Below, piece by piece: positions 9,263 through 48,135 of a stretch of DNA of 64,000 nt; positions within the stretch are counted from its first letter, which is position 1, and every line of letters starts with the position of its first letter. The notes under the pieces were generated by a model. It had not been told where the DNA came from, did not search any database, and saw only the letters and a program-made list of their open reading frames with translations. The position numbers and the translations under genes were made by a program. Source of the DNA: Macrostomum hystrix. Its lineage: Eukaryota > Animalia > Platyhelminthes. The DNA is taken from assembly GCA_950097015.1 (NCBI GenBank), contig CATNEN010000033.1:2666001-2730000 (forward strand). Reading direction: 5' to 3'.

Positions 9263-10372
9263 GTCCGGGTGATCGAATCCTTGACCTTATTGATACCGAT
9301 GCTCGACTGACAATCCGCGAGATCGCTGACCGGTTGGACACACCGAAGTCAACTGTCCATCTCTGCATGCAAAACATGGGTCTGGCCAAGCTGAGTGCTC
9401 GGTGGGTTCCGAGGATTCTCACCCCTGACATGAAGATGCAGCGAGAGCAGACCTGCCAAGGCAATCTGACGCTGGTTGATCAACATGGAGGATGGAGCTC
9501 TACCCGTTCTCTGGTGGTCACTGGAGACGAAACTTGGATCCCTACTTCGACCCTTCGACCAAGGAGGAGTCCAAGGTGTGGACGATGAAAGGTTCTGACC
9601 CGCCCATCAAGGCTCGACGTGAGACCCATTGCCAGAAGGTGATGCTTTTGCTCTTTTTCGACTGTCATGGGCCACTGACAATTGACTTCCTGGAGCCAAA
9701 TGCCACTGTCAATTCGGACCGCTACATTGATTTGCTGAAGAAGCTGAAGAAGGATATCTCAAACAAGCGGAGAACTCCAGTGAAGCCAATGCTCCTTCAT
9801 CATGACAATGCTCGGCCCCACACTGCACAAAAGACACTCGAAGCAATTAAAAAAATGCAATTCAACCTCCTGCCTCACCCACCGTATTCACCGGACCTGG
9901 CACCAGCTGATTTCACTATCTTCCCGAAGCTCAAGCAGCTTCTGAGGGGCAGAGTTCATGCCAACCGTGACTGCCTTGAGCAAGAAGTGCGACGGGTTCT
10001 TGTTCACGAAATGCCAAGGCAGACATATGCAGATGCCATTGACGGCATGCTTACCCGGTGGAAGAAGTGCATCCAACTGAAGGGTGACTATGTTGAGAGG
10101 GTCTCAGTTGCCACTGAGGATGACATTTGAAGCTTTTTGAAAGACAGCTGTCCTTCTGTTTCATTTTGTTCCATATGCAACCTCCATGTTCCTGATCATG
10201 TATTTAGATGCAGTACCCCACTGCAGTTAAGGAGGCATAACTTTTGAACAGTTAGTGATATTTTCAAAACTCTTTAACTGTGTCATTTGCAAATAAAGCC
10301 GCTATAAAATAAATTTGTTCCTGTTACTCTTGCTAGCTGTTAAAAAGAGTTATGTGAAAAAGTCACCCCTCG
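9262..10372 (+). mobile_element. Tc1/mariner DD34D transposon, 5'-deleted, transposase frameshifted at ~9540
   Basis: HTH (LTIREIADRLDTPKSTVH), WVPRIL, VVTGDETW, HHDNARPH and YSPDLAPADF motifs, with 34 aa between the 2nd and 3rd Asp. The right end ...AAAAAGTCACCCCTCG|TA is a mariner-type TIR with TA. No matching left TIR. Confidence 0.93.
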
Positions 10373-12359: not shown

Positions 12360-14213
12360 GTGACATTTCGCCACATTGTGCCTGAATTAGACGATGTACC
12401 AAGCCGCAACGAGCCGACGCCCTCAGAAACGAGTATGGACATTGCAGTAAAGACGCCTGAGCAGATAATCGATGAAAGGAAAAAATCTGAATCGACTGAT
12501 GCAGCTGATGCCCACTTTGACATCTCATTCCTCAGTCAGCCTCTTCAAGAAGCCAAGACGCGACTCGGGAAGCGGAAGCAAAAGCTGGCTGACAAAGAAT
12601 CAGCTGCGTCCGCCGAAGAGACGACCGTGTTAGAAGATGCGAGCTTTAAGGTCCCGAAGACCAAAAAGTTCCGAAAAAGGAGATCACCCATGAAGGGAGC
12701 TGACAAAAGCGATAAAGCCGTACAGACAGAGTTGATTCCAGTAGATGCAGCAACTAACACAGAGAACAACCTACTGATGGATACAGACTGGAAACGTTTG
12801 AAATCTCTCGAGGAAGGAGTCGCAGCGGTTCTCAGTGAAGTAAAACAACTGAAAAGTAGCTTGTCAATTGATGAGTACATTCAAAAGACTCGCAATGCGC
12901 TTCAATCCTTGACCACCGGTCTAATGCATCAGTTAGAGGCAAAAGCCAAAGAAAGTCAAACGGAACTACTGAAAGCGCTAAACATCACAAAATCCGACGT
13001 TGTGAACCATCTAAAGCAAACAAGTAGCTCAACTAAGGATGCTATCATTAGCGAAGAAAGAGCAGTGAAGGCAGAAGTAATAAAAAGCCAACAAATCAGC
13101 CACAGCCTCGAGCAGAAGGTCGGTGAACTGGTCAGTCTGCAAGCGCTGGCGTTCACTAAGACGCAGAATGAAAGAGCAGGACGGGAAACATATGCTGAGA
13201 AGGCCTCGCGCTCAGTGAACCCAACAGCATCTTCAAAAAATGTAACGATGGCAGTCAGTGCCAGTAAAAATGCAGAGAACGCATCAGGAGCTGTAGCAAG
13301 GGACTCGGAACCAGCTGAGGCAGAAAGCAACAGTTGTACCAAACAGAAAGTTAAAGAAGGCCTGAAAAAGCATGATATAGTCGTTGTCAGCTCAAAGCTA
13401 GGGAAAGCCCTTGACTATCGCAGACTCTTCCCGAATAGTACAATTCGAGTTGTCTACTACAACACTCAAGAAAGGCTCATTGAATTACTGCAAGAGCCAA
13501 ACTTCAGTGCGCAAGAATGTCTGGTAATTGACTTAAACCATGAGCCATCAATGGAGGTGGCATATAAAGCTGTCACTGCAATTGACGCTGGGCAAAGGCA
13601 ACACGGTGCGAATTGCCTGCACCTACTCATCATCCCAGACAGTTCGACACGAACAGAACAACTCTTCGAGAAAGAACTGTGTGAGTATGGTGTTAAACAT
13701 CAGCTTTTAACATTTAACTTTCATGAAATCCACTTCTACGACGGTGAACTCAACAGCAGCGGAGCGGACTTTTTGTTTGCGTTAATGTCCAAATGCATTC
13801 GAAATCTAAACCTGAAAGTACGGCCGCATCCGGCTAACACAGAGAACCAGCGCCAGCAAACAGTGCATCACCGGCATCAACACAGCCACAGAGAGTCACG
13901 AGGCGGCGGTGCAACTGGCTACAGGAACTATCGAGCGCATAGCAGCTACCCAGTTCGAGATGCCAATTACATCCGTAGCGAAATTGACCACCGCATCAGC
14001 ACCAACGGCTATTTTGACAGAAGTCGTGCTAGCCGCTATCGAATCAGCAACGAGTACGACTACAACAAAAGAGACCGCAAAAACTTTATAAGTGGCTATC
14101 GCGCCAATATCGAGCCCAGCAACTACCGCAGAAGTAGCTTTGGGTACCGCAACAGATACCAACAAGTTGGTGTCAGGCGCCTCGACGACCGCCAGTTTCG
14201 TTGCGTCGACTAG
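12360..14213 (+). CDS. LINE ORF1p: basic N-terminus, coiled coil, degenerate SGNH-esterase-like domain, R/Y/S-rich tail (first ATG 12434)
   Basis: Lies directly upstream of ORF2. IVVVSSKLGKAL and FYDGELNSSG fall where the GDS and DGxHL blocks sit in LINE ORF1 esterases. Confidence 0.75.
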   Translation: MTFRHIVPELDDVPSRNEPTPSETSMDIAVKTPEQIIDERKKSESTDAADAHFDISFLSQPLQEAKTRLGKRKQKLADKESAASAEETTVLEDASFKVPKTKKFRKRRSPMKGADKSDKAVQTELIPVDAATNTENNLLMDTDWKRLKSLEEGVAAVLSEVKQLKSSLSIDEYIQKTRNALQSLTTGLMHQLEAKAKESQTELLKALNITKSDVVNHLKQTSSSTKDAIISEERAVKAEVIKSQQISHSLEQKVGELVSLQALAFTKTQNERAGRETYAEKASRSVNPTASSKNVTMAVSASKNAENASGAVARDSEPAEAESNSCTKQKVKEGLKKHDIVVVSSKLGKALDYRRLFPNSTIRVVYYNTQERLIELLQEPNFSAQECLVIDLNHEPSMEVAYKAVTAIDAGQRQHGANCLHLLIIPDSSTRTEQLFEKELCEYGVKHQLLTFNFHEIHFYDGELNSSGADFLFALMSKCIRNLNLKVRPHPANTENQRQQTVHHRHQHSHRESRGGGATGYRNYRAHSSYPVRDANYIRSEIDHRISTNGYFDRSRASRYRISNEYDYNKRDRKNFISGYRANIEPSNYRRSSFGYRNRYQQVGVRRLDDRQFRCVD

Positions 14214-14421
14214 GACCGCCTGTCCAAGCCTGTCCGGCAACAACTTCAATCGCCGGGGGGGTGGAGGAGTCATTTAGCTGCTCAACTCGGGTCCTCTAAC
14301 TCCTTTGCCTAATAACTTTCTATTTTTGATACCGTCAATTCCCATACCGCGCAACAGGTTTTGAAGGTTTTGAACCCGTCGTGACTGACTCTAAGGACTA
14401 CTACTCCCTCTTTCTACGAGT

Positions 14422-17400
14422 ATGTTAACTTCTACGCTAAATTTTAACTCCCGAATAGTCACTGAAACACAGGGCAGCTGCGAAAAGAAGGTTACTTATA
14501 ATAAATCAGAGTTGATTATCACCAGTTGGAACATAGATGGACTGATGCTCAGTGGAGAATGCAAAATGGAATCACCATGTTTCCACGAACATATTAGGAA
14601 TAGAGACATAGTTTTCCTCTGTGAGACCCACGCCAAACAGGAGCAGCTAGACTCAAACACGCTGATAGATTTCACCTGCTTTGGAGCAGATGGAATCAAG
14701 GCAAGGGGAATCAACAAAGGTAGATTATCAAATGGCATGGTTTTCCTCGTTAAAAATAATATTGCAAAGAGAACCACATTAGTGCACAAATCTGACTTCG
14801 CTCTGGTACTAAAAATAAAGCAAAAGCAGTCTGAAGAACCCCTGTATATCTTAGGGTGCTATATCCCACCGGAAAATTCTAAATACTACAAAGAAGATAT
14901 ATGGGAGGAGATTAAATATCTCATCCAGCTCTTCTCAAGAGAGGGCTCCGTATTAACAGTAGGTGACTTCAATGCACGAACTGGCACATTACAGTCCAGC
15001 ACTAGGGATAAGTTTCCCAGACAGAATCAGGACTCTGAGAAAAACAAGCATGGATTAAGACTGATGGAAATGTGCTCCGAGACCAAGAGCACGATTCTGA
15101 ACGGAATGACTCAGGGTGACATTATGGGAAATTACACGTTTAGTAGCACACTAGGCCGAAGTACCATAGACTACGCTATTGCATCCATGGATAAAGTGGA
15201 TATTATAAAAGACTTCTTTATTCATCCTCAAAGCTTTCTGTCCAGACATTGCCCGCTAACAGTCACTCTGATTTTTCCTGATCATGTCCAACCAGAACAC
15301 GCAAACCAGGAAAAACATGAATCCTTCCCAATGCCTCCAAGATGGGACACTGAAACGCAGGGAAGTTACATTGAGGCATTGAATAACAAACAAAGCGAAG
15401 AAATAATTAGAAAGTTGCAATCTATCGACGCACACGATGGAAAATCCCTGGAAAATTTGTTCTCGAGCTTGACCAACCTGCTTAGAGACTCAGTGGCAGA
15501 AAGCTGCGCAAAGACAATCATTCCGAACAAGTTCTGGACAAATCGAGACGAGACACTAAGAAACTTGAGCAAATCATTAAAGTACGTGGCCAGGAAAAAA
15601 AGACGTAGACCAACTGACAGCGCGCTGGCATCAGAATATAATGGGCTAGCGAAAAAATACAAACAACAGCTCAAGAAACTTAAGCAGATGGACATAAATG
15701 ACTGCATTCAGAAAATGGCGGCTAACGGAACCTCAAAGGGATTCTGGTCCGGTCTTAGAAGAGCAGAAGAGTTGCTGTTCCCCAGCAGGAGACTTAACAG
15801 ATCTCAAGCCCCAATCGCTGACATCGCGGACAACCTAACCAAAGTGTTTAACGCACATCCTTCTTCGGGAACCCAGCCGCATCGCACAGATGAAGCAGTT
15901 AGTCCCGAAGATTTAATTAGCTGCGTAGATCTCGATAGAGCAGTTAAAAAGCTAAAGAGAAGAAAGGCTGCAGGAATAGATGGTATAACAAATGAGCACA
16001 TTATCTACGGACAAGAGAAGCTAAAACCCGTACTTCTGAAGCTTTTTAACGCAAGCGTAAGACTCGGCCAGACTCCTGCACAGTGGTCAAATGCCCTAAT
16101 CACACCGATTTATAAAAAGGGTTCCCGTAGTGACCCCAAAAACTACAGACCCATAAGCGTGCTGCCTGCCCTGGCTCGCCTGTTTGCCTCACTTATCTAT
16201 GAAAAGCTAGAAACTCATATTCGCACCCTCGACTTGCTTTCAGCCAGTCAAATAGGAAATAGAAAGGGCTACCGAACTTCAGACCACATTGCCACTCTCT
16301 TGACGTTGATCCACAACAAAAAGCGTCGCAAAAGGCCATTTCACTTAGTGTTCTTTGACTTAAAAAGCGCATTTGACATGGTCCACCATCCAACACTTTT
16401 CCAACGACTTAGGGAGTTAAAGGTCAGCCCAGAAATAATCGAAGCAATACAAAGCATGTACTCAGGAGCTAAATTCCAACTGAAGATCTCAGATGGCCAA
16501 GCAACTAAGGCAAGGAGCATAACAAATGGAGTAAGACAAGGCTGTCCCCTATCCCCTCTACTCTTCTCACTCTATATAGATCCTTTGAGCACATTGCTAA
16601 GGGATTCATTTCGCAGCGACACCTTCATTAAAGATGAACAAATCAACAACTTGCTATACTGCGATGATTTAGTGATCTTTGGAGAGAATCCTCGAGAGTT
16701 GCAGAAGGGCCTCGATAAAGTGTCAGAATTTTGTCAGAGCCACAAGCTAGAAATCAATATGCAAAAAACTAAGGTTATTAGCTGTTGCCCTGACCCATCA
16801 AAGACGGCTAACAAACTATTTCTGCAGGGACAACTGTTAGATAGCGTCAAAGAATGGAAATATCTTGGCTTTCACATCAATGCTAAAGGAACCGTGGATT
16901 CCCATGCCACAGAGATTAACAAAAAATGTGGATATCCTATTCTTCTCTTAAGGAAATTAGCCAGCCATGGGGCGGTCAGATACAATCAGCTCATGCTGTA
17001 CTGCACAGCAATGATAGAAAGCATAGCTCTGTACGCCTCTGAGGCCTGGGGGGCTTTTGTCTCGTGGAACCTGGGTCCTTGGGACCGCTGTCTTTTTGAA
17101 AGAGTAAACATCAGGTGCTGTAAAGCCATACTACAAGTCAGCCAAAATACGGATGGCAACGGGGCCCGCTCGGAGTTAGGCAGATTGCCTTTATTATACA
17201 ACATCCAGAAAAGAAGCATTTCGTACTGGGCCTCCATAACAAGCCGGCCGGACTCCATAATTTCCAAGTTATTGGCGGACCAAACATACAGTGATGTTGG
17301 AATCAAAGCAAAGACCAACAATGAGGTTATGCTGAACTGCAGAGGCATTAGTCCTGCAAAAGCAATTGGAAACCACAGGAAAAATTTCGTTTCTCAGTTC

Positions 17401-17856
17401 GATACCCATTGGAGACAAAGGACACAGAACTCAAGCAAGCTAAGTCACTTCTATTACTCCTTCAAGCAATATTATTCAGCCGAAAAATATTTACAACAAA
17501 TATACAACCCGGAGTGGAGACGTACCATAGCCTCGTTTAGACTAGGAAACCATAAGCTAGCTTGCGAAACATTGCGAACTGCGAGACCGAAAATTCCGTA
17601 TGCAAATAGATTATGTAGTAAGTGCAAAACAGAAGTTGAAAACGAGGTCCACTTCCTTTTTAAGTGCACTTGGAATAAGTATAGCGCAGTACGTTCGAAA
17701 TTTGAGACGGAAGTTTCTGGGAAAACCCCCAATTTCATATCCTTAACAGCAGAAGAAAAATCTAACTACATAATGGCTCAAGACGATAGGGAAACCGCTG
17801 AAGCTTTAGCAAAATACATCATAGAAATATCTAAAATAAGGGAACAGCTGCCCTGA
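14422..17856 (+). CDS. LINE ORF2p: apurinic endonuclease + reverse transcriptase + C-terminal CCHC
   Basis: SWNIDGL, LCETH, GDFNART, IDYAI (APE); NYRPIS, FFDLKSAFDMV, GVRQGCPLSPLLF, YCDD, YLG (RT); CSKC-x8-H-x4-C. Confidence 0.97.
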   Translation: MLTSTLNFNSRIVTETQGSCEKKVTYNKSELIITSWNIDGLMLSGECKMESPCFHEHIRNRDIVFLCETHAKQEQLDSNTLIDFTCFGADGIKARGINKGRLSNGMVFLVKNNIAKRTTLVHKSDFALVLKIKQKQSEEPLYILGCYIPPENSKYYKEDIWEEIKYLIQLFSREGSVLTVGDFNARTGTLQSSTRDKFPRQNQDSEKNKHGLRLMEMCSETKSTILNGMTQGDIMGNYTFSSTLGRSTIDYAIASMDKVDIIKDFFIHPQSFLSRHCPLTVTLIFPDHVQPEHANQEKHESFPMPPRWDTETQGSYIEALNNKQSEEIIRKLQSIDAHDGKSLENLFSSLTNLLRDSVAESCAKTIIPNKFWTNRDETLRNLSKSLKYVARKKRRRPTDSALASEYNGLAKKYKQQLKKLKQMDINDCIQKMAANGTSKGFWSGLRRAEELLFPSRRLNRSQAPIADIADNLTKVFNAHPSSGTQPHRTDEAVSPEDLISCVDLDRAVKKLKRRKAAGIDGITNEHIIYGQEKLKPVLLKLFNASVRLGQTPAQWSNALITPIYKKGSRSDPKNYRPISVLPALARLFASLIYEKLETHIRTLDLLSASQIGNRKGYRTSDHIATLLTLIHNKKRRKRPFHLVFFDLKSAFDMVHHPTLFQRLRELKVSPEIIEAIQSMYSGAKFQLKISDGQATKARSITNGVRQGCPLSPLLFSLYIDPLSTLLRDSFRSDTFIKDEQINNLLYCDDLVIFGENPRELQKGLDKVSEFCQSHKLEINMQKTKVISCCPDPSKTANKLFLQGQLLDSVKEWKYLGFHINAKGTVDSHATEINKKCGYPILLLRKLASHGAVRYNQLMLYCTAMIESIALYASEAWGAFVSWNLGPWDRCLFERVNIRCCKAILQVSQNTDGNGARSELGRLPLLYNIQKRSISYWASITSRPDSIISKLLADQTYSDVGIKAKTNNEVMLNCRGISPAKAIGNHRKNFVSQFDTHWRQRTQNSSKLSHFYYSFKQYYSAEKYLQQIYNPEWRRTIASFRLGNHKLACETLRTARPKIPYANRLCSKCKTEVENEVHFLFKCTWNKYSAVRSKFETEVSGKTPNFISLTAEEKSNYIMAQDDRETAEALAKYIIEISKIREQLP

Positions 17857-18680: not shown

Positions 18681-19150
18681 GTTATTAAAAAAACAGCTAA
18701 CATTTTACTAGAAATGAAAATAAATTTTTACTAGGAATCAGTTTTTTTTATATTGGAATCCACACTTTTTGTGTGGATCCCCATTATTATTAATGTTGAC
18801 TTACTACTGCAATATTACTTATAGTAGTGCCGATTGCACCTGAAGTAGTAAAGTATACTGCGAAAGTAATTGAATTAACATGGCTAGTCTATATACTTGT
18901 AATGGTTTTTTTCGCGAAATAGCCATAGAAATTTTATCTATTAGTATTTGCGAATTGGGGATTGCAATACACACGTGTGAATTTTCGCGAAAAAAAGTTT
19001 TGTCTGTAGTCAAACCTAGAACTACAGTTGAGTACAGTCGCAAAAGTGAGCTATGTAAGACTGAGCGCGCTTAACATCTACTTTGTGACCGACTGACTGA
19101 CCGACCGAGTAATTACGAGTTAATTCCTACGCCTCGACTTGAATTTTGAA

Positions 19151-21839
19151 ATGTCAGCATTTCGTGGCCGTGGAAAGAAGGCTCGTGTGGATGCCAGCAT
19201 TGCTACACCGGATGCTAATGGTCTACGCCAGACTATGATCGTGGACTACTTTAGATCTCAGCAGTCAACCGATCGTCCTACTGGCGCAGCATCTAGACCG
19301 AGTGTGCAAGCATCATCGGCATCATTTACAGCAATGGCAGGAACGGCTGGTCGGGCATCGGCTGCCTTTACTGTTCCCCGCCTTGCAGTAATACAGCAGC
19401 AACAGCAGCAGCAGCAGCAGTCGAAACAGCAGCAGCAGCAGCAGCAGCCGAAGCAGACTGTCCCATCGAGTGCAATTCGGAAGCGTCGATATGCCCGATC
19501 GACTCTACGCAAGCGGACGCGTACAGTTGTCGATTTGGATGCTTCGTCTAGCAATTCATCGTCGTCTGATGCTGAAGACACTGGCGTTGGATCTCTAGTA
19601 GCCATGCGACAGCCTCTGGTTATTGCTGCCCAACCAATTTGTGGCGCCGGCGACCATGCTGATCGCATAGAGTCCACGCCTAAAGTGCTATCATCTGAAG
19701 ATGAATCAGCGGACGACTTGCTAGCAGACGACGTACAGCTGGAGATTATGGACGAGTTCATCAGCAATACAGACAATGTAGAGTCAAATACTGCCCCCGT
19801 TTTGACGGCCTCTAATAGTTCAGCCTCATCATCGCAGCTAGTCGATGATAGGTACAAAACAGAGGTGGCAGAATTATTGCGCGCAAATGGCGAGTCGACT
19901 ATTCCTAAAACTAGTGCCGCACTTGGTGCCTGTCCGACTTCGCCAGATTATGCGCCTCGCTCTACACCGGCAATGTCTGTCATCGAGAATGGGACAACAT
20001 CCGATGCTGATGAACCAGTTCGCGCTGTATTCTCTCCAGTGTATGTCGACGCTTCTCAACCAACAGCGCAACAGTCGGGACGACTGCAGCAATCGCAGCA
20101 GCAGCAGCAGCAGCAGCAGCATCAACGGCGAGAGCAACAACCACAGCAACAGCCGCAGCAGCAGCAGTGGCGGCAGCAGCTGCGGCAGCAGATACAAGGG
20201 CGTGAACGGCAGCAGCAGCAAGACGATGGCGTGGCATTTGCTCCGATAGCCGATGAATATGCGTTGTGTCGTTCGACATCACCACTTCTACGGCTATGTC
20301 CTCGAGCTCCAATTACCGACTACGCCTCTTTAACAGCAGAGGGCAGGTCGGTTCTCTCGACTAGAAGGACGTTCCATCTTATCGAGATTGCATTCATCTC
20401 GAGCGATGTGGAAAAATTCAAGTCGTTTCTAGAAATTGAATTGAGAGCTCCATGTGCACAGTTTGCCATCGGCGCAACATCATGTATTCAGGTTGACATG
20501 CTGACCAGCGAAGAAATCCGAGCGCGTCGTCAGCAGAAATACAACATGTCAATCCGTGAATGTTTAGGAGCTCCGAATCATCCCAATGGTTTGCTGATGT
20601 TCCTGAACCTGCGCCAACCAGAAGATGGTTACACTGTTTACTGCGGACTGTTTGACCTCTTGATGGAATCTGCGGAAGCTTCGGCCTACCTGCATCCTAC
20701 AATGTGTAGAATGACAGTGTCTGGTGTACGCAGTGCGTCAAGTGCAATTAAGCTAGCTACCAGTATGGACGAGGATCCCGTTCTATACCGCGTTTCTATT
20801 CAAGAGTGCAGCTTGCTGGCCAAGGCCTTTTGCTGGGTTGCTGCTCATGAGGCGTCGAAAACTGAGCCTTCGCTAAATAGAGGCTTCATGTTTGAACACT
20901 TTCGCGTCCGACAAGAGCTCGGTGATTACTTTAAGGTGACCCAGATGAAACGCGTAATAGCAACAGAGGTGCTAGCTGGTTGCCAAAACTGTCGCCCTAC
21001 TGCCGATGCCGCCGCCGCTGCTGATGGTGCTGCAACAGCCGACTACTTGAGGACGACCAGGCCTATTGAGCTGGAGGTATGCAAAATATTATAAGCCATA
21101 AGATTACTTAGCACACTTATAAGTATTGATCATTGAATTTTTGCTGTTCCTTTGAATCAAAAAATTATTAACTCAATCGACAATTAATTAATTATATGCA
21201 AAACTACCTACCATCCAACAGGTCCCTGCTGCTGCTGATGCTGTCCAATTTCCTGATGCCGCCGTCGCTCATGTTCCCCGGTTGATCGCCGCCACTAACG
21301 TGTGCCCAACAGTAAAGGCTGTGTGCAGAGCGTTACAATCGCCAACTGGTGTCGTCTATCTATACGGCCCGTCTGGCGTTGGGAAGACACACTCTGTGCA
21401 AAGCCATCTCGGTTCTACGAAGGTGCTGACTGTCCAGGTGCAGAAGCGGTCTAACACGTTTCTGTTTGACAAGCTCTGCGAGGATATACACACTGCCATG
21501 TTTATTGACGAGCTACGCCCGAATCTGTTTGATGACTCATCTGAAGTCATGTGCACACTACTTCGATTGATCAATGGAGACACTTTTGAAGTCAATGCCA
21601 AATACAAGGCTATTCGACACGTCTCTTGGCTCGATCGACTATTAGTGCTTGCTGGGCATGCTCCGGTCAGTGCGTATTCGGAGGACTTTCAGCGCCGATT
21701 AGAACCGACACCTGATGGGCACAAGCGTCCGGTAGTTGCCATCTTCGTTGGTCATTCTCTCAAGCCCGACTACCAATGCGATGGACAATGCCACCCAATA
21801 CGCAATGTGTTTGGCGATCACCCGGACCGGCGAGTATGA
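19151..21839 (+). CDS. 2-exon SF3 helicase/replication-initiator-like protein (~847 aa; exons 19151-21076, 21222-21839) with N-terminal PIP box
   Basis: Phase-0 intron GAG|GTATGC ... ccaacag|GTC joins the two ORFs in frame. Walker A GPSGVGKT, Walker B MFIDE, B' EVNAKYK, motif C position LVLAGH. QTMIVDYF PIP box. AATAAA at 22013. Confidence 0.75.
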
Positions 21840-22244
21840 GCGACAAGCAGGTGCTGCTAGCAGGTTTTTTTTTACACCAAACTGCCTGCATGCTGCTATT
21901 TTATCGACTATATTTTTACTCGGTCATTTAGTCAGTCAGTCTTTCAGCTGTTTTTTTATATTTTTTACTGTTTCATACTGTTTTTGTATGCAATTTTATA
22001 ATTAGTCATACAAATAAAATCAATTTATATGCTCAGTTTTGAGCTTTTATTGTTGTGAAGTAGGTAATTGCTACTTCTGTTGCAAAAAAATCATATTTCT
22101 TATTACTATATATAGTATTACGCATTCAAACGAAGGTATATGCAAAGTGTCAAAGTATTAATTAATAAAATTCATTTATAGGTGTTATCGCGAAAATAAA
22201 ATAACGACTTTTATCCGAAAGTAAATAGCGGTATTTTTGCAAAA

Positions 22245-22695
22245 GTTCTTAAAGTAGTGTGAATGGCTACATATTATGGTATTTTCGCGAAAATACTGCT
22301 ATGCTATTAAACAAAGGTAGTTGGCGGTATTTTTGCAAAAGTTATTAAAGTAGTGTGCATGGCTACATATTATGGTATTTTCGCGAAAATACTGCTATCC
22401 TATTAAACGCAGGTAGTAAAGGTAGTTTGCGGTATTTTTGCAAAAGTTATTAAAGTAGTGTGCATGGCTACATCTTAAGGTATTTTCGCGAAAATACTGC
22501 TATGCTATTAAACAAAGGTAGTTGGCGGTATTTTTGCAAAATTTATTAAAGTAGTGTGCATGGCTACATATTATGGTATTTTCGCGAAAATACTGCTATG
22601 CTATTAAACAAAGGTAGTTGGCGGTATTTTTGCAAAAGTTATTAAAGTAGGTTATATGCGTGGCTATATGTTAAGGTATTTTCGCGAAAATACAT
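22245..22695. repeat. 96-105-bp tandem array, each unit with the perfect 18-bp palindrome GTATTTTCGCGAAAATAC
   Basis: Five palindromes at ~22279, 22375, 22480, 22576 and 22676. Each unit also carries TTTTGCAAAA. Confidence 0.92.
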
Positions 22696-23182: not shown

Positions 23183-24001
23183 TCAAACGTATGCCTCCGC
23201 CTCTTCAGCTGCGGCATACAATAGGCAGTCGTCAGCTGGGTCAAATAAACAGCTACTGGCTGCCATCGCTGCCGCTGATGCTGACGCCTCCGCCTCTTCA
23301 GCTGCGGCATACAAAAGCTCGTCATCAGCTGGGTCAAACAAGCAGTTACTGGCTGCCATCGCTGCCGCTGCTGCTGACGCCTCTGCCTCTTCAGCTGCGG
23401 CATACAATAGGCAGTCGTCAGCTGGGTCAAATAAACAGCTACTGGCTGCCATCGCTGCCGCTGCTGCTGACACCTCCGCCTCTTCAGCTGCGGCATACAA
23501 AAGCTCGTCATCAGCTGGGTCAAACAAGCAGTTACTGGCTGCCATCGCTGCCGCTGCTGCTGACGCCTCTGCCTCTTCAGCTGCGGCATACAATAGGCAG
23601 TCGTCAGCTGGGTCAAATAAACAGCTACTGGCTGCCATCGCTGCCGCTGCTGCTGACGCCTCCGCCTCTTCAGCTGCGGCATACAAAAGCTCGTCGTCAG
23701 CTGACTCTAAGCAATTGGCTGCCATCGCCGCTTCGACATCTTCAGCTGCGGCATACAAAAGCTCGTCGTCAGCTGAGTCTAAGCAATTGGCTGCCATCGC
23801 CGCTTCGACCTCTTCAGCTACGGCGTATAACAAATGGTCGTCTGCCAGGCCGAATACAAAACTGTATGTTGAATTGTATGTTTCATCATACCCGTAGTCA
23901 TCATAGCCTGGCTCTTCATTCAGCTCAACGTCATCGTCGTGACAGTTGGATTTTTCCGCATCGTTTAGAGTTGGCCCTGATGATGATGTTGATGTAGGCA
24001 T
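23183..24001 (-). CDS. 272-aa acidic repeat protein, 8 x ADD(E/C/H)LLYAAAEE motif
   Basis: ATG-initiated ORF. Repeat units are 72 and 93 bp (multiples of 3). Minus-strand AATAAA at ~23125. Confidence 0.6.
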   Translation of the reverse strand: MPTSTSSSGPTLNDAEKSNCHDDDVELNEEPGYDDYGYDETYNSTYSFVFGLADDHLLYAVAEEVEAAMAANCLDSADDELLYAAAEDVEAAMAANCLESADDELLYAAAEEAEASAAAAAMAASSCLFDPADDCLLYAAAEEAEASAAAAAMAASNCLFDPADDELLYAAAEEAEVSAAAAAMAASSCLFDPADDCLLYAAAEEAEASAAAAAMAASNCLFDPADDELLYAAAEEAEASASAAAMAASSCLFDPADDCLLYAAAEEAEAYV

Positions 24002-27926: not shown

Positions 27927-29483
27927 TCAATTGCCGCACAGACATTGTCGCGTCTTGATCAATCGGCCGTGTCTTGACACTGTCGTAGTCAATATCTTGT
28001 GTGTGCATATACAATACGAGCGTCTAGATGCATGCAAAGCATCAGTCGCAGGTATAGTCGATTGCGATGACTGCACATCACTTATTGACATTGCGACATC
28101 GTCGTCAAGGTCGGCGGTCAGAACCAATTCTGCTGCGGCATCGGCATCTCCTTGCGGCACTGTCACATCAGATAGCTGTTCATCAGAATCGTTGTTGACA
28201 TCAGCCATGATGATCTCCATTGCGACATCAAACATGTCATCGATGTGACTTGCTTCGGAATGGGCAGCGAAGTCCGATCCAGCAGCAGCAGCAGCAACAC
28301 AATCCGTATTGGTAGACAGAAATTGCATAGCGGCAGGTTGCATCAAGTCGAGCAGAATCTGCGCCATTTCAATGTCATCACCGTGACCGGATGATGTACC
28401 AATACACACTGACTGCGTGCTGACATTGGCTTCGATTGAAACATCGGTCACACCGTTTTGTGCACTGACACCAACTGTCGCTGTTGTTACTCTTGGCGCA
28501 CAGACAGGAATAAAAACAGGTAGCGGCACCGGAACGAAATACGGCACCTCGACAGTTGGAATCGGCAACATAGGCATCGCTGGTGATCCGATTGGCTCAA
28601 TTTGCAACATTGGCATTGATGGCGATGGTACTGGCGAGTGATCCGATTGGATTGTTTCTGCTGCTGCTTCAATCGCATTGTGATTAAGCGGAGTAGATGT
28701 ACAAATTGGATGCCGTACTGATCCAATTGACACGCTGTCCGCTTGGCTCACATGTTCAGCAGGCTCGTCAGTACTTGTTGCATAGATGATGCCTGATTCA
28801 GCTGCGCTATCTTCTATGATGATCGTTTCTGCTGGCTGCTCTGCTGCTGACTGCTCTGCTGATGGCTGCTCTGCTGCTGGCTGCTCTGCTGCTGGCTGCT
28901 CTGCTACTGGCTGCTCTGCTGATGGCTGCTCTGCTGCTGGCTGCTCTGCTGCTGGCTGCTCTGCTACTGGCTGCTCTGCTACTGGCTGCTCTGCTGCTGG
29001 CTGCTCTGCTGCTGGCAGTCGACGGGCAATGTAGCGCTCGTGCATATAGTCGACAATCTCGCCGACCACAGCTGGTAGTGGATCCAGTTGTTCAAGCTGG
29101 ACCACTTCGCCCATTGCCGCTGCTCCCGCCACTGCCACTGGCTGAGCTGGTTGGCCACCGACGCGACGCTGCGGATTCCGCTTACATCTATATAGATGAT
29201 GCAACATGTTGGACGTTATTTTGTTGCAATGCGAACACGCTAGCACACGTCCACCGGCAGCGACATCCACACCAGCCCGCTGTAGTTGCAGCATCTTCCA
29301 GACGGCACTTCCACGCTCCTTAACCGACGCGAATAGCGATGGCCTTTGACCAACAGGTAGGACTGTCCAGTCAAATTCGGCATGGACAGCTTTATGCGCC
29401 TCTATAAAATGTCTTCGCATCATATTGGCGCGGATTTGCTGGCCGCAGAAATGGCAGAAGCGGAGTCCGTTGTTGTCTTCCAT
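27927..29483 (-). CDS. 518-aa protein: N-terminal double zinc finger, PAAEQ pentapeptide repeats, acidic C-terminal half
   Basis: CHFC..NMMRRHF..H..FDW..LP..RP..VWK..CSHC..HLYRCKRNP aligns with exon 1 of the YR gene. 15-bp in-frame repeats at ~28830-29015. Confidence 0.75.
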   Translation of the reverse strand: MEDNNGLRFCHFCGQQIRANMMRRHFIEAHKAVHAEFDWTVLPVGQRPSLFASVKERGSAVWKMLQLQRAGVDVAAGGRVLACSHCNKITSNMLHHLYRCKRNPQRRVGGQPAQPVAVAGAAAMGEVVQLEQLDPLPAVVGEIVDYMHERYIARRLPAAEQPAAEQPVAEQPVAEQPAAEQPAAEQPSAEQPVAEQPAAEQPAAEQPSAEQSAAEQPAETIIIEDSAAESGIIYATSTDEPAEHVSQADSVSIGSVRHPICTSTPLNHNAIEAAAETIQSDHSPVPSPSMPMLQIEPIGSPAMPMLPIPTVEVPYFVPVPLPVFIPVCAPRVTTATVGVSAQNGVTDVSIEANVSTQSVCIGTSSGHGDDIEMAQILLDLMQPAAMQFLSTNTDCVAAAAAGSDFAAHSEASHIDDMFDVAMEIIMADVNNDSDEQLSDVTVPQGDADAAAELVLTADLDDDVAMSISDVQSSQSTIPATDALHASRRSYCICTHKILTTTVSRHGRLIKTRQCLCGN

Positions 29484-32017: not shown

Positions 32018-35000
32018 TCAGATGTCCAGTCTAGTTCTCGAACTGATCAGGCGCCCAGATCGCGTCCTGTATTCCGTTCGACGAACCATGAGTAGCTCAG
32101 AATCCGAGCTGGTCTCATTGTCATTGCTGACGTGCTGTTGTTCACCATCATCACCTTCTTCGTCGATATCGTCGTGAACGTTGCCTTGTCCAGCCGATGC
32201 TCCAAACATCGGCGGTTGACTAAGACTGCGTCGTCTAGACGATGTAGACGATATAGGCGATGGTGTTGCTGAATCGATGGCCGGCTTTGTCGACTCTGTG
32301 TTGTCCGTTGTTGAACATCTAGGACTAACCGTAGCGGGTCGCATTGTCGACATTCGAGGTCGCTTCTTGTCAGTGGCCTTGCAAATGGACGACCGTCGAG
32401 TGCGTCGCTTGCGTGTGCGTTGACTATGTGGCATCACAATGTCATCAGCAGGTAGAGGAGATGCAGCCGATGAATTGGTTGCGTCCAGATCAACGCTACA
32501 GGCGGCAGAGCGACGACGATTCGTGTCGTTTTCGGCTGTTGGATGTCGTTGATGTCGACGATCAAGTGGCCGATTGTGACAGAATGTCTCGAAGCATCCT
32601 CTGACGTCGTCGGCGACCATCAGATTGGCCTGCTGTTTGGCCAGGCGTCCATACGCATTCACGACACAGTTGCGCGATGTGTCGTACAGAGGCACCAGCT
32701 GGTCTAGCTTGTCGGGATGCGCGTGCACATAGGCCGACAGTACATTTCGACGACCATCGCCCATGCGATAGGGCCGATCGATGACCAACTCGGCGCCCTG
32801 CTTGACAAGCGTGCTGAAACTTGTCGAGTCACGCTGCTTGCCACGATGCGTAGGAAACAGCAGACATTTGCCTGGCCTGACATGGATGTTGCACTCGGCG
32901 AAGTATGGCAATAGAAAGTTGTCTATCCATTGCAGTAGACATTCGCCGACTTTGCGTGGCGCAGTCCAGCTTGCACCTTTACCACGACCGCCCTTTTTGT
33001 GTGCCACTTCGGTAGGCGGCAGGACTGTGACAATGGTGGAGGACGTTGATACGCCGCTATTGAGTGCAGCATCCAAATAGCAACGCCGGATCGCGACCCA
33101 AGGACGTAGTCGATTGGCATGGACAATTGCTGCACAGAAGAAGGCCAGTTCACGCGTGATCGGCATAATAAATGTATTCCATTTGCCGACGACGTTGGCC
33201 ATTCGACGTGCACATTGTCCAATGCGACCCCAGTAGCCCTTCACGGGTAGATGAGACCACTGATGTTTGGCGACCATATCAATCAGGCAGTCTAGCCGGT
33301 TGTGAATGATGCGCCATTCGTCAGCGGTCAGGAACTTATCCGTGTAGGACAGCTGGCGTTCGTCATCGCGCAGGTGATAAATATTCTCTTGCCGCTGACG
33401 AATCAATCCAATGCAAGCCTGTACATGTTAAAGGGTTATGAAAGAGAAAGTACATACAGTAGCTTCTACAATTGTTCGTGATATATCAACTAACATAGTA
33501 TACAATATGCGACACAACAACACTGCTCACCATGATTGATTCGATGCGGCTAGTCAACAGACCAGATACTGCAGTCTGATGATAGAGAATACCATCTTGC
33601 GCGGGTCAGGACAGGCAGGCAATTCTGACGCGGCCTTGACAATGTCGGCATGCACGTTGGCAAACAATCCATCTGGTGGCGAGGTCAATTGGAACGCGTT
33701 CATAACACTAGGAGCACCGAAGTCGTTGTTGGCTGCTAGAAACTTCTTCGCACCGCTCAATATGTTATGAAGCTCGTTCATTCGCTGTCCAACAGTCGAT
33801 GGTTTCCAGACATGGCGCTTCACCATCTCGTCCAAATCGAATTGGATGCGCGCTGGATTGATGAACCACATCTCGACTGTGACATTGATTGCGTGTAGGA
33901 GACGACTAGTTGTAGCATGATAGTTCCGCTGGATTGCTTTCCTACGGCTAACATGCGATGCGTTCTCTTCTACACAGCAATGACCCTTGAACCAGATGTC
34001 GCCGACATTGTCTAGTTGCTTGTACATGTGTTCAGATGCAACGTGGTAGTCTGGGCCGTCGAAAACAACAAGCCGAGACTTCTTGTGCCTCCGTTGCAAT
34101 ACAAGCTCCTCTTCACTGACAGAATCATCAGTATTTTCCACGTCAGATTTAGAGGTCTGAGTCTCTGCTTGTCGCTGACTGACAGCATTGGTGACTCCGA
34201 CCGGAACATAGTCTGACGTATACTGGAGAATTGCTTCTGTCAGATTGACCAGATTCTGCAAGCTAGTACACACGCGCGGATGCTCAGCGTTGTGGGCTTT
34301 CTGCAGAATCTCGTTGAGGCCGGCCGCATTCAGACGCAGTCCATTGATAAACTCTGTTTGACAGGAAAGTTATAAATATTTGTTGATTATTTTTTTGTCT
34401 TTGTGTAAATTTAAAAATGTAAAGGCATGTACAACAATATTTTAGACCACTTACTGATCGCTGCCACATTGTCGTTGGCATTATCGAATTCTGGCATCGT
34501 ACTCGTTTCGTTTTGCAGTCGCTCGATGTCGTGACTGACAATATCGGCCGTGTAAGATGGTCCGGCACGATCGAAACTAGCCAACACCGGTGCTACTAAA
34601 GTAGACGGTGTGACAGACGATGCACTGTTGATAATGCGTACAGCATTGGACTGTCCAGCAGAAGACGATCCCGCAGAAGACGCTAACACGACAATAGGCG
34701 GCTCAATGTTTGCACCCGCGTCTATCGAATCAGACGAAGAGTCGTCGCTGTCACTTGACGAACGGGTTGCATTTGCTGCCTCTGTAATTGCCGGTTTACG
34801 CTTGCATGTCCTGGCAATGTGTTTACTGAGATGCTGAACACCTTTGCCACAGTATTGACAATAAGACAAAGATGCATCGGATCCATCCCGACGTAACCGG
34901 ATGATCTTCAATACGGTCTTTGCCTTGACGTCATACGATGCAGTCGCTGCGGGTCGTTGAACCTCCGGGATCGTGCTCCAATCGAAAGCCGAGACGAAGT

Positions 35001-35076
35001 CTGAATGATTTGTAAGAAAGTGCCTTACAACATTCGTCTTCCAAAATGAAGCTTTGCAGACTGGGCACGTATCCAT
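32018..35076 (-). CDS. Zinc-finger + tyrosine recombinase gene, copy 2 (exons 35076-34455, 34353-33531, 33418-32018; ~948 aa if one 1-nt deletion at ~33595 is corrected)
   Basis: GT-AG introns of 101 and 112 nt are conserved with copy 1. Domain order: zinc fingers, core-binding-like WKPSTVGQRMNEL, catalytic R..HK..R..Y. The C-terminus is complete, with a minus-strand AATAAA at ~31805. Confidence 0.75.
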
Positions 35077-46400: not shown

Positions 46401-47560
46401 CTCTGGACAGAGGCTTGTGACGCACTCAGCCCTTCCTGGCATCCGATATCGGTCTACACCCCCCTACGCGGCTCAGTTCGGAATTGCAATTTGCAATTTC
46501 TTAGTTAAAGCCCCCCAAGAGTCCGCCAGCCTCATTTGCACATGGCCCGCCAGCCTCCTAAACTCCTTCGTTTAAAAAAGACAAGGCCCAGCAAAACAAT
46601 TTGAAAGAGGATGAGAGGATGAGAGAGGATGAGAGGATTAGAGGATGAGAGAGGACGAGTGAAGATGAGAGGATGAGAGATGAGAGATGATGAGAGAGGA
46701 TGAGAGGATGAAAGGGGATGAGAGGATGAGAGAGGATGAGTGAAAATGAGAGAGGATGAGAGGATGAAAGAGGATGAGAGGATGAGAGAGGATGAGAGGA
46801 TGAAAGAGGATGAGAGGATGAAAGAGGATGAGAGGATGAGAGAGGATGAGTGAAGATAAGAGAGGATGAGAGATGAGAGATGACGAGAGAGGATGAGAGA
46901 GGATGAGAGGATGAAAGAGGATGAGAGGATGAGAGAGGATGAGAGGATGAGAGAGGATGAGAGAGGATGAGAGAGGTTGAGAGGATGAGAGAGGATGAGA
47001 GAGGATGAGAGAGGATGAGAGGATGAGAGAGGATGAGAGGATGAGAGAGGATGAGAGAGGATGAGTGAATAAGAGAGGATGAGAGAGGATGAGAGAGGAT
47101 GAGAGGATGAGAGAGGATGAGAGAGGATGAGAGAATAAGAGAGGATGAGAGAATAAGAGAGGATGAGAGGATGAGAGGATGAGAGAGGATGAGAGAGGAT
47201 GAGAGAATAAGAGAGGATGAGAGGAGGAGAGGATGAGAGAGGATGAGAGAGGATGAGAGGATGAGAGGATGAGAGAGGATGAGAGAGGATGAGAGAGGAT
47301 GAGAGAGGATGAGAGAATATCAGAGGATGAGAGGATGAGAGGATGAGAGAGGATGAGAGAGGATGAGAGAGGATGAGAGGATGAGAGGATGAGAGAGGAT
47401 GAGAGAGGATGAGAGAGAATGAGAGAATAAGAGAGGATGAGAGGATGAGAGGATGAGAGAGGATGAGAGAGGATGAGAGAGGATGAGAGAGGATGAGAGA
47501 GGATGAGAGGATGAGAGAGGATGAGAGAGGATGAGAGAATGAGAGAGGATCAGAGAGGAT
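43415..47560. repeat. GAGAGGAT(GA) 7/10-mer satellite in two blocks (43415-46020, 46605-47560)
   Basis: Direct reading. Recurring variant motifs indicate a higher-order period of roughly 0.8 kb. Confidence 0.95.
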
Positions 47561-48135
47561 CAGAGACAATGCGCGGCTGCCTGACAGTTCGCCGCATGCA
47601 GCGGCCAGTGTGTCGAGAGTCAGCAGCGCCTCTGACCCTGATGGCACGGAGAAGCAGCTGGGCGCAGAGGGTCTACAATGGTGTTGAAGGCATTGAAATC
47701 GTGAAAGGCATAGTGCTAGAAAGTTGACAAGTTTAGCTACTACGAGCTATTTCATATCATCTCGCATATTCGTAGAAGCAGGATTTAGCGATCGCGTATG
47801 AGCAAGGGAGCGCTGAGCAATTCAGTTTCGAGTTTGTGGCCTGCAAAGTGTAAATTTTTCATCGCCGTATCTCCCAGCTGCGCACAATGTGCCGTCTCCC
47901 AGTCTCGGACCAGATCCAATCTATAAGAATGTTCTCTGGACAGAGGCTTGTGACGCACTCAGCCCTTCCTGGCATCCGATATCGGTCTACACCCCCCTAC
48001 ACGGCTCAGTTCGGAATCGCAATTTGCAATTTCTTAGTTAAAGCCCCCCAAGAGTCCGCCAGCCTCATTTGCACATGGCCCGCCAGCCTCCTAAACTCCT
48101 TCGTTTAAAAAAGACAAGGCCCAGCAAAACAATTT
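46020..48135. repeat. ~580-bp direct duplication (46020-46604 and ~47553-48135)
   Basis: Near-identical unique sequence, from gacaatgcgcggctg to aaagacaaggcccagcaaaacaatttg, appears twice and is separated by satellite. Confidence 0.92.

What the first reader, a model, noticed from the sequence alone, without database searches (positions are those of the whole stretch)
19151..21839. Spliced SF3 helicase with a textbook PIP box and an unrecognised central domain
SEEN: a 145-nt phase-0 intron fuses the 19139 and 21282 ORFs into ~847 aa. The N-terminus has a basic NLS-like stretch and QTMIVDYF (Q-x-x-I-x-x-Y-F). A polyQ/acidic linker and a ~230-aa globular region follow, then a compact P-loop domain (GPSGVGKT, MFIDE, VNAKYK) with motif C reading LAGH instead of the usual TSN/TTN. 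KNOWN: this motif layout is typical of the small SF3 helicases of CRESS, parvo, papilloma and polyoma initiators, and PIP boxes bind PCNA. INFERENCE: a T-antigen/E1/Rep-like initiator that recruits the host clamp. The central domain may be an origin-binding or degenerate HUH fold that recognises the nearby palindromes.
Basis: partly seen in the sequence, partly recalled or inferred. Interest (0 to 1): 0.8.

Follow-up and report, generated by a model that had tools for sequence, protein, structure and literature searches.

The report
Rep-derived helicase gene in a host genome
This is an intact two-exon gene in an animal (flatworm-like) genome whose protein looks like a long-resident, nuclease-dead descendant of a small DNA virus or plasmid replication protein; it is not an active viral initiator, and its PCNA-binding motif is unproven.

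Summary
ORFs 19151-21076 and 21222-21839 are joined by the only frame-keeping GT..AG pair, a 145-nt intron of 27% GC. Together they encode 642+205 = 847 codons, and every quoted motif is present.

Relatives carry the sequence on both sides of the junction in one ORF, so the splice model is supported.

The P-loop domain folds confidently. Its best structural matches are papillomavirus E1, Vientovirus Rep and AAV Rep68/40, which are SF3 helicases. No Pfam family reaches its cutoff, and the motif C Asn is missing (LAGH).

The family is tiny: 16 hits among 1.84 billion representatives. Two are from Macrostomum lignano, a few are intron-bearing environmental contigs, and the distant tier holds small Rep-like proteins.

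Profile comparison links part of the central domain to the N-terminal domain and linker of those Rep-like proteins (score 44 against at most 19 in shuffles). The positions opposite their His-x-His and Tyr-x-x-Lys are not conserved.

The neighbours are host genes and transposons. The "nearby palindromes" belong to a repeat found in at least nine places between 7 and 41 kb.

The PIP-like motif arises in 2.6% of shuffles and was not seen in the M. lignano locus.

Verdict: an endogenous, Rep-derived SF3-like gene family. It is a new variant of a known kind, of moderate interest.

The parts
19151..21839 (+). Whole coding region of the gene (two exons, one intron, stop included); 847 codons
19151..21076 (+). 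Exon 1 coding part, 642 codons
21077..21221 (+). Intron: 145 nt, GT..AG, phase 0, 27% GC, stops in all three frames
   Evidence: Relatives are continuous across the junction
21222..21839 (+). Exon 2: 205 codons plus stop; holds the SF3-like P-loop domain
19229..19252 (+). PIP-like motif QTMIVDYF, residues 27-34, in a low-complexity N-terminus
   Evidence: Appears in 2.6% of shuffles; not seen in L001
19163..19522 (+). Two basic NLS-like stretches (19163-19186, 19478-19522) flanking the first polyQ run (19394-19447)
20096..20119 (+). Second polyQ run, near the end of the ~360-residue low-complexity N-terminal region (Q 16%, S 12%, A 11%)
   Evidence: No sequence conservation with the M. lignano N-terminal ORF
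20234..21076 (+). Central region, 281 residues. No family or structure match by sequence; the AF2 model failed
20555..20953 (+). Part of the central region homologous to the N-terminal domain and linker of the Rep-like proteins P0012 and P0015
   Evidence: hhalign gave score 44.3 and E 1.1e-5 against the P0012/P0015 profile, and E 6e-5 over 116 columns against P0015 alone. 150 column shuffles averaged 12.5 with a maximum of 19.4
20591..20614 (+). Stretch LLMFLNLR, aligned opposite the His-x-His stretch of P0015; neither His is kept
   Evidence: moderate alignment confidence
20753..20776 (+). Stretch LATSMDED, aligned opposite the Tyr-x-x-Lys stretch of P0012 and P0015; Tyr is replaced by Leu and Lys by Ser
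   Evidence: high alignment confidence
20981..20992 (+). C-x2-C, first half of a four-Cys pattern that the intron splits
   Evidence: Present in all 5 family members that extend this far upstream
21303..21326 (+). C-x6-C on the helix just before the first strand of the P-loop domain
   Evidence: Present in 8 of the 9 members that cover it
21366..21389 (+). Walker A, GPSGVGKT
21498..21512 (+). Walker B, MFIDE
21591..21608 (+). VNAKYK in a predicted beta-hairpin. Lys127 is invariant in 7 close kin and aligns with Lys in the Rep-like proteins
21648..21659 (+). LAGH at the motif C position; the Rep-like proteins have Ser/Thr-Asn/Glu here
21687..21701 (+). FQRRL; Arg159 is invariant and is a candidate arginine finger
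21753..21791 (+). C-terminal His...Cys-x3-Cys; H178, C186 and C190 are invariant in 7 close kin
19087..19112 (.). Left arm of a 26-nt inverted repeat (85% complementary) that brackets the gene; unexplained
21916..21941 (.). Right arm of the same inverted repeat
18910..18992 (.). Two copies of the palindrome TTTCGCGAAA, 168 and 241 nt upstream of the ATG. They belong to a dispersed repeat and are not specific to this gene
22228..22693 (.). 96-bp tandem array carrying the same palindrome, downstream of the gene

Best explanation
The locus is an intact two-exon gene of a eukaryotic, probably flatworm-like, genome. It belongs to a very small and so far undescribed gene family.

I read the protein as a long-endogenised descendant of a Rep-type replication protein, that is, an HUH-type nuclease domain followed by an SF3 helicase. 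It has four parts:
- a non-conserved, low-complexity N-terminal extension of about 360 residues, with basic stretches, polyQ runs and a PIP-like motif;
- a central domain whose C-terminal half is homologous to the nuclease-like domain and linker of small Rep-like proteins, but without their His-x-His and Tyr-x-x-Lys residues;
- a four-Cys pattern;
- a compact SF3-type P-loop domain.

The P-loop domain keeps Walker A, Walker B, the hairpin Lys and a candidate Arg finger. It lacks the motif C Asn, and it ends in a conserved His/Cys/Cys motif.

Inferred mechanism: the protein can no longer nick DNA. It most likely still binds ATP, assembles into a ring and grips or moves along DNA as a host protein. 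The changed motif C suggests that ATP turnover is altered. Coupling to PCNA through the N-terminal motif is possible but unproven.

Shown: gene structure, fold class, family size, homology outside the P-loop, and host context. Inferred: the direction of descent (virus or plasmid to host), oligomerisation, DNA translocation, zinc binding and PCNA binding.
For: - Gene structure.
- One-ORF continuity across the junction in relatives: P0001/L001 and P0006 (E 2e-11).
- Host context: LINE, mariner, PWWP, midasin fragment and LRR genes.
- Family size: 16 hits at E<=1e-3 among 1.84e9 representatives. Two are from Macrostomum lignano. The distant tier has P0012, P0013 and P0015 with N-terminal Rep-like domains.
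- P0013 matches solved Rep structures: 7lar at E 1e-7 and the nuclease domains 6h8o and 2hwt at E 3e-3.
- P0014 reaches the PF00910 cutoff (21.8 bits against 21.5).
- The AF2 model of exon 2 has pLDDT 79.7, with a core above 90 and no helical lid.
- Foldseek PDB ranks 1-13 shown are all E1, Vientovirus Rep or AAV Rep. The first other AAA+ protein is at rank 19. The BFVD top 50 are Rep, NS1 or SF3 proteins.
- hhalign of the central domain against the Rep-like N-terminal parts: score 44.3 against shuffles of 12.5 +/- 1.9 (maximum 19.4). It still holds without the window sequence (E 3e-5).
- Relatives carry introns of their own, which fits long residence in eukaryote genomes.
- Invariant residues in 7 close kin: K127, A144, R159, H178, C186, C190.
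Against: - No Pfam or NCBIfam family reaches its cutoff for either exon.
- A sequence profile against PDB ranks midasin and Rix7 (classical AAA) above Rep.
- Foldseek separates SF3 from other AAA+ proteins by only about tenfold in E-value, with TM-scores of 0.4-0.5.
- The nuclease nature of the N-terminal domains of P0012 and P0015 rests on motif order and one weak Pfam hit (Replitron_HUH, E 0.06). A profile of the two found no solved nuclease. Their link to the confirmed Rep P0013 is a non-significant 10-column match.
- The AF2 model of the central domain failed (pLDDT 38), so its fold is unknown.
- There are no expression data.
- The organism of the window is unidentified.
Confidence: 0.6

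Rival explanations
1. The gene is the replication initiator (T-antigen, E1 or Rep-like) of an integrated or episomal virus-like element. It recruits the host clamp through a PIP box and recognises the nearby palindromes as an origin.
For: - SF3-like fold.
- A canonical PIP pattern in the N-terminus.
- Palindromes on both sides of the gene.
- A 26-nt inverted repeat brackets the gene.
Against: - No capsid gene or other viral gene lies nearby. The neighbours are host genes and transposons.
- The palindrome is part of a ~96-bp repeat found 31 times between 7 and 41 kb.
- The positions opposite the nuclease-type residues are replaced.
- The gene has an intron, and its relatives have introns of their own.
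- The PIP-like motif and the inverted repeat are both absent from the M. lignano locus.
Confidence: 0.07
2. A lineage-specific cellular AAA+ ATPase with no viral or plasmid ancestry. Its likeness to SF3 helicases reflects only the shared P-loop core.
For: - The top Pfam hits are generic (AAA_16, AAA_22).
- The PDB sequence profile favours midasin, Rix7 and Clp.
- An ordinary AAA protein (P0011) is among the HMM hits.
Against: - The best structural matches are SF3 helicases in both libraries.
- The model has no lid domain.
- Homology to the Rep-like proteins extends outside the ATPase domain and in the same order.
- The hairpin Lys and the post-motif-C Arg align with the Rep-like proteins.
Confidence: 0.15
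3. The gene is the cargo or transposase-like protein of a mobile element bounded by the 26-nt inverted repeats at 19087-19112 and 21916-21941.
For: - The inverted repeat brackets the gene closely. Its inner 10 nt are exact and occur nowhere else in the window.
- The region is rich in transposons.
Against: - The window holds only one copy of the gene.
- I saw no target-site duplication by eye.
- The arms are partly tetranucleotide repeats.
- L001 has no matching repeat.
- The known paralogues are 44-52% identical, unlike a young repeat family.
- The nuclease-type residues are missing.
Confidence: 0.08
4. A decaying endogenous viral fragment whose long ORF is kept open by chance and by CAG repeats, with no function.
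For: - The N-terminal third is low-complexity and not conserved.
- The M. lignano copy in L001 needs one frame change to be read through.
- Motif C is altered.
Against: - 847 codons are open across a clean intron.
- Functional-type residues are invariant in 7 kin that are only 27-52% identical.
- The AF2 fold is confident.
Confidence: 0.1

Closest known systems
Rep proteins of CRESS-DNA viruses and related small replicons (HUH nuclease plus SF3 helicase), e.g. the solved Rep helicases 7lar and 9pqj
   Same: - The domain order is the same: nuclease-like domain, linker, SF3-type P-loop.
- It shares the SF3 fold.
- Walker A, Walker B, the hairpin Lys and the Arg after motif C align with the Rep-like hits.
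- Homology extends into the pre-helicase region.
   Different: - It sits in a host genome and has an intron.
- At 847 aa it is about twice the size, with a 360-residue low-complexity N-terminal extension.
- The positions opposite His-x-His and Tyr-x-x-Lys are replaced.
- The motif C Asn is absent.
- It has additional Cys/His motifs.
- It does not reach any Pfam Rep or helicase cutoff.
Parvovirus NS1-like sequences endogenised in flatworm genomes (Francois et al. 2016, PMC5013282)
   Same: Both are SF3-helicase-bearing, virus-related sequences resident in platyhelminth genomes.
   Different: The published sequences were found by clear similarity to NS1 (>=30% identity in the NS1 domain, mostly in cestodes and trematodes). 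This protein gives no Parvo_NS1 hit at E<=1, and its nearest sequence relatives are not named parvovirus proteins.
Papillomavirus E1, polyomavirus large T antigen and AAV Rep68/40 helicase domains
   Same: E1 and AAV Rep are the best solved-structure matches, at E 2e-6 to 1e-5. My own recollection, offered as a lead and not tested, is that large T antigen has a zinc-binding module before its helicase domain. The four-Cys pattern here occupies the same place.
   Different: TM-scores are only 0.4-0.5 and identity is 11-17%. PPV_E1_C gave no Pfam hit for this protein. No origin-binding domain was recognised.
PIP-box proteins that bind PCNA
   Same: The motif matches Q-x-x-[ILM]-x-x-[FY]-[FY]. It lies in a disordered, basic N-terminus.
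   Different: It occurs in only one sequence. The pattern arises in 2.6% of shuffles, and it was not found upstream in the M. lignano locus. Binding was not tested.

Membership tests
SF3 helicase superfamily | Walker A and Walker B motifs | tested here: met
   GPSGVGKT and MFIDE align with the P-loop and the acidic motif of all relatives
SF3 helicase superfamily | Beta-hairpin (B') with a conserved Lys between Walker B and motif C | tested here: met
   AF2 predicts strands 121-124 and 132-135. K127 is invariant in 7 kin and aligns with Lys in the Rep-like hits
SF3 helicase superfamily | Motif C ending in Asn (sensor 1) | tested here: not met
   The window has LAGH where the Rep-like hits have Ser/Thr followed by Asn/Glu. 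Only P0004 among the close kin keeps an Asn
SF3 helicase superfamily | Fold closest to solved SF3 helicases, with no C-terminal AAA lid | tested here: met
   Foldseek PDB top ranks are E1, Vientovirus Rep and AAV Rep, with other AAA+ proteins from rank 19. The BFVD top 50 are Rep, NS1 or SF3 proteins. The model has no helical lid. The margin over other AAA+ proteins is only about tenfold
SF3 helicase superfamily | Curated profile match (PF00910, PF01057, PF00519, PF19263) | tested here: not met
   PF00910 scored 17.1 bits against a cutoff of 21.5, and DUF5906 scored 14.6 against 27.6. Parvo_NS1 and PPV_E1_C were not reported at E<=1
HUH (Rep-class) endonuclease | His-hydrophobic-His metal-binding motif | tested here: not met
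   hhalign places G-L-L of the window opposite H-L-H of P0015, with moderate confidence
HUH (Rep-class) endonuclease | Catalytic Tyr in a Y-x-x-K motif | tested here: not met
   Leu and Ser stand opposite the Tyr and Lys of P0012 and P0015, in the high-confidence part of the alignment
HUH (Rep-class) endonuclease | HUH nuclease fold | tested here: inconclusive
   The AF2 model of the central domain had pLDDT 38, so no fold search was run. No PDB or Pfam hit by sequence
HUH (Rep-class) endonuclease | Detectable homology to Rep nuclease domains | tested here: inconclusive
   Homology to the N-terminal domains of P0012 and P0015 is significant. That those domains are HUH nucleases rests on motif order and one weak Replitron_HUH hit (E 0.06). 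PDB gave no support
PIP-box PCNA-interacting proteins | Q-x-x-[ILM]-x-x-[FY]-[FY] in an accessible region | tested here: met
   QTMIVDYF at residues 27-34, in low-complexity sequence. Appears in 2.6% of shuffles
PIP-box PCNA-interacting proteins | Motif conserved in relatives | tested here: not met
   Not found in L001 5000-10800 on the + strand. The N-terminal regions share no similarity
PIP-box PCNA-interacting proteins | Binding to PCNA | not testable with these tools
Classical AAA+ ATPases | Alpha-helical lid after the P-loop core, and a PF00004 match | tested here: not met
   The model has no lid. PF00004 scored 15.2 bits against a cutoff of 21.2, over the P-loop only

The most novel reading that the evidence does not exclude
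A replication protein of a small DNA virus or plasmid was captured by a flatworm lineage and stripped of its nicking activity. It was then fitted with a host-type N-terminal tail carrying a working PIP box. It now acts as a PCNA-tethered ring ATPase at host replication or repair forks, which would be a co-opted viral helicase in the core DNA metabolism of an animal.
Probability: 0.1. Interest if true: 0.75.

Novelty: new variant of a known kind. Interest (0 to 1): 0.5.

Why it matters
Endogenous Rep and NS1 sequences are common, but most are recognisable fragments. This one is a complete, intron-bearing gene family so divergent that no curated profile detects it. It keeps the motor residues, has lost the nuclease-type residues, and has gained Cys/His motifs. 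If it is expressed and under selection, it would be a clear case of a host keeping only the helicase half of a viral initiator. It would also explain a set of otherwise unexplained hypothetical proteins in Macrostomum, a regeneration model. It further shows that linking sequence profiles with fold comparison can recover such genes.

Tried and rejected
**Searches that found nothing useful**
- Pfam, PHROGs and NCBIfam scans of both exons gave nothing above cutoff.
- PDB sequence searches with single sequences were not significant.
- The PDB family-profile search was dominated by generic P-loop matches.
- Word searches with the central domain found no relative, either as a region of exon 1 or as a query on its own.
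- Two metagenome scans found nothing, and one alignment was too loose to use.

**Attempts to name the organism**
- Exact look-ups of two window ORFs failed.
- There is no nucleotide similarity to the M. lignano locus.

**Central-domain structure**
- The AF2 model failed (pLDDT 38), so I ran no fold search on it.

**Ideas rejected**
- I considered that the TTTCGCGAAA arrays were homologous regions of a large integrated DNA virus. I rejected this because the flanking genes are ordinary host genes and transposons.
- The bracketing inverted repeat forms no hairpin of its own. It has no counterpart in L001.
- Replitron membership of the relatives rests on one weak hit and was not pursued. The literature describes Replitrons in plants, algae and protists.

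- Fetching the contigs of P0012, P0013 and P0015, and scanning viral contigs. I could not tell whether they are viruses of animals.

I resent the job without those rows. The same two pieces remained in my local hhalign scripts.
- I left them as written.
This report is the same with that field added.
Full report
**Observation**

The + strand holds ORF 19139-21094, whose first ATG is at 19151, and ORF 21282-21839. The sequence reads GAG|GTATGC at 21077 and CAACAG|GTC at 21221. A script that listed every GT..AG pair able to carry the first frame into the open part of the second found only this one. The 145-nt stretch has 27% GC against 52% in both exons, and stops in all three frames. No search or fold used the joined protein.

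**Is it one gene?**

The only close hit of a word search with exon 2 was P0001, a 252-aa hypothetical protein of Macrostomum lignano (45% identity, E 5e-34). In its locus L001, the stretch matching the end of exon 1 and the stretch matching exon 2 lie in one ORF. P0006, from an environmental contig, aligns with the last ~110 residues of exon 1 (E 2e-11). It then runs on in the same ORF into the P-loop. A four-Cys pattern also spans the junction. The C-x2-C half lies in exon 1 and the C-x6-C half in exon 2. C-x2-C is present in all 5 family members that reach that far upstream, and C-x6-C in 8 of the 9 that cover it. So relatives support the splice model. Transcript evidence is lacking.

**Context**

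The window is a eukaryotic genome region. It contains:
- a LINE with endonuclease and reverse transcriptase (14422-17856);
- a mariner-type DDE ORF;
- a PWWP gene fragment;
- a midasin lid fragment;
- an LRR gene;
- a 4-kb purine-rich satellite.

Nothing near the gene looks like a capsid gene or any other viral gene. The palindrome TTTCGCGAAA occurs 31 times where 0.06 are expected. It sits in ~96-bp arrays in at least nine places between 7 and 41 kb. The palindromes next to the gene are therefore not specific to it.

**The P-loop domain**

Pfam gives only sub-threshold generic hits: AAA_16, AAA_22, and RNA_helicase PF00910 at 17.1 bits against a cutoff of 21.5. Parvo_NS1 and PPV_E1_C do not appear at E<=1.

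A profile of exon 2 plus P0001 was scored against 1.84 billion representatives and found only 16 proteins at E<=1e-3. They fall into four groups:
- Two M. lignano proteins, P0001 and P0002.
- Short environmental fragments (P0003-P0010).
- One ordinary AAA protein (P0011).
- A distant tier, P0012-P0016, at E 8e-5 to 5e-4.

In the distant tier, P0013 matches solved Rep structures: helicase 7lar at E 1e-7 and nuclease domains 6h8o and 2hwt at E 3e-3. P0014 reaches the PF00910 cutoff, and P0015 weakly hits DUF5906 and PPV_E1_C.

AF2 with the 16-sequence alignment gave pLDDT 79.7 with a core above 90. The model has a beta-hairpin between Walker B and motif C, and no helical lid. Foldseek against PDB ranks papillomavirus E1, Vientovirus Rep and AAV2 Rep68/40 first, at E 2e-6 to 1e-5 and TM 0.4-0.5. 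HslU and RuvB follow from rank 19 at 2-3e-5. The top 50 in BFVD are all Rep, NS1 or SF3 proteins.

Against this, a sequence profile against PDB ranks midasin and Rix7 above Rep, and the structural margin is modest. I conclude that the fold and layout are SF3-type. Formal membership fails on two counts: no curated profile is reached, and motif C reads LAGH where the Rep-like proteins have Ser/Thr followed by Asn/Glu. K127, A144, R159, H178, C186 and C190 are invariant in seven kin that are 27-52% identical.

**The central domain**

By sequence it matches no family, no solved structure and no database protein. AF2 failed (pLDDT 38), so I ran no fold search.

I built a local profile from the window slice, the N-terminal part of P0006, the N-terminal part of P0001, and single-frame ORF pieces of L001 and L003. 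I compared it with the N-terminal parts of P0012 and P0015. Results:
- Score 44.3, E 1.1e-5.
- 150 column shuffles gave 12.5 +/- 1.9, with a maximum of 19.4. The reversed control gave 12.4.
- Without the window sequence, E was 3e-5.
- Against P0015 alone, 116 columns aligned at E 6e-5.

The matched part is nt 20555-20953. In that alignment the window has G-L-L opposite the H-L-H of P0015. It has Leu and Ser opposite the Tyr and Lys of the Y-x-x-K stretch.

That these N-terminal domains are HUH nucleases is my reading of their motif order, plus one weak Replitron_HUH hit (E 0.06). PDB gave no support. The link to the confirmed Rep P0013 is a non-significant 10-column match at the same motif.

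**The N-terminus**

About 360 residues are low-complexity (Q 16%, S 12%, A 11%). They share no similarity with the equally low-complexity upstream ORF of L001. QTMIVDYF fits the PIP consensus. However, such a match arises in 2.6% of shuffles and was not found upstream in L001. PCNA binding is possible but untested.

**Age and status**

Relatives carry introns of their own. In L004 a GTGAGT donor follows Walker B directly, the stretch after it is AT-rich, and the coding sequence resumes in another frame. P0007 and P0010 end at the same point. L001 has a putative intron inside the central domain.

The M. lignano copy in L001 also needs one frame change to be read through: one frameshift, with no in-frame stop noticed. 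I do not list its place. It may be an assembly error or real decay.

The two M. lignano proteins are only 44-52% identical to the window's, so these are old paralogues or distant orthologues and not a young repeat family.

Parvovirus NS1-like sequences in flatworm genomes have been described (PMC5013282). Those were found by plain similarity to NS1, which this protein lacks.

**Unexplained**

A 26-nt inverted repeat, 85% complementary and with its inner 10 nt exact, brackets the gene at 19087-19112 and 21916-21941. It forms no hairpin of its own. It is partly tetranucleotide repeat. It has no counterpart in L001.

**Verdict**

This is a real, intact, spliced host gene. It belongs to a tiny, unannotated family best explained as a long-endogenised Rep descendant that keeps an SF3-type motor and has lost its nuclease-type residues. 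The reading as a viral initiator acting on nearby palindromes is not supported, and the PIP box is unproven.

- I could not tell whether they are viruses of animals.
Those two pieces stayed in my local scripts.

Noticed in passing
window 7125-40875 (arrays near 7.1-8.3, 11.1-11.9, 18.9, 22.2-22.8, 26.9, 29.7-29.9, 31.0-31.5, 35.5-36.1 and 40.8 kb): A ~96-bp repeat carrying the palindrome TTTCGCGAAA occurs 31 times where 0.06 are expected, mostly in tandem arrays between ORFs. It could be a satellite, a MITE-like family or a shared regulatory module.
   Followed up: partly
window 19087-19112 and 21916-21941: A 26-nt inverted repeat brackets the finding's gene closely. Its inner 10 nt are exact and unique in the window. 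It remains unexplained.
   Followed up: partly
window 32018-33406 (-): A 462-aa ORF with no Pfam hit. By eye its middle part resembles a tyrosine recombinase of a Crypton- or DIRS-type element. Not tested.
   Followed up: no
window 27927-29483 (-) and 34411-35076 (-): Two ORFs share an N-terminal zinc-finger-like module followed by 'FDW...QRP'. They look like paralogues, perhaps parts of one repeated element.
   Followed up: no
window 23193-23824: A 93/186-bp tandem repeat is open in several frames on both strands. One frame encodes an Ala/Glu/Asp-rich repeat protein.
   Followed up: no
window 43446-47566: A 4-kb purine-rich 10-bp satellite (unit AGAGGATGAG) explains the GC skew near 1 and the long ORFs without Pfam hits on the - strand.
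   Followed up: yes
window 12360-17856 (+): An apparently intact non-LTR retrotransposon lies just upstream of the gene. It has a 617-aa ORF with no Pfam hit, followed by a 1144-aa endonuclease/reverse-transcriptase ORF.
   Followed up: partly
window 9492-10130 (+): A mariner/Tc1-type DDE transposase fragment.
   Followed up: no
L001 11201-11922: The M. lignano locus has a small element with 48-nt perfect terminal inverted repeats around an HTH-like ORF, just downstream of the P0001 gene.
   Followed up: no
P0002 (UniRef A0A1I8FT91): This M. lignano gene model fuses the family's P-loop domain to a 7-TM receptor-like tail. It is probably a chimeric prediction.
   Followed up: no
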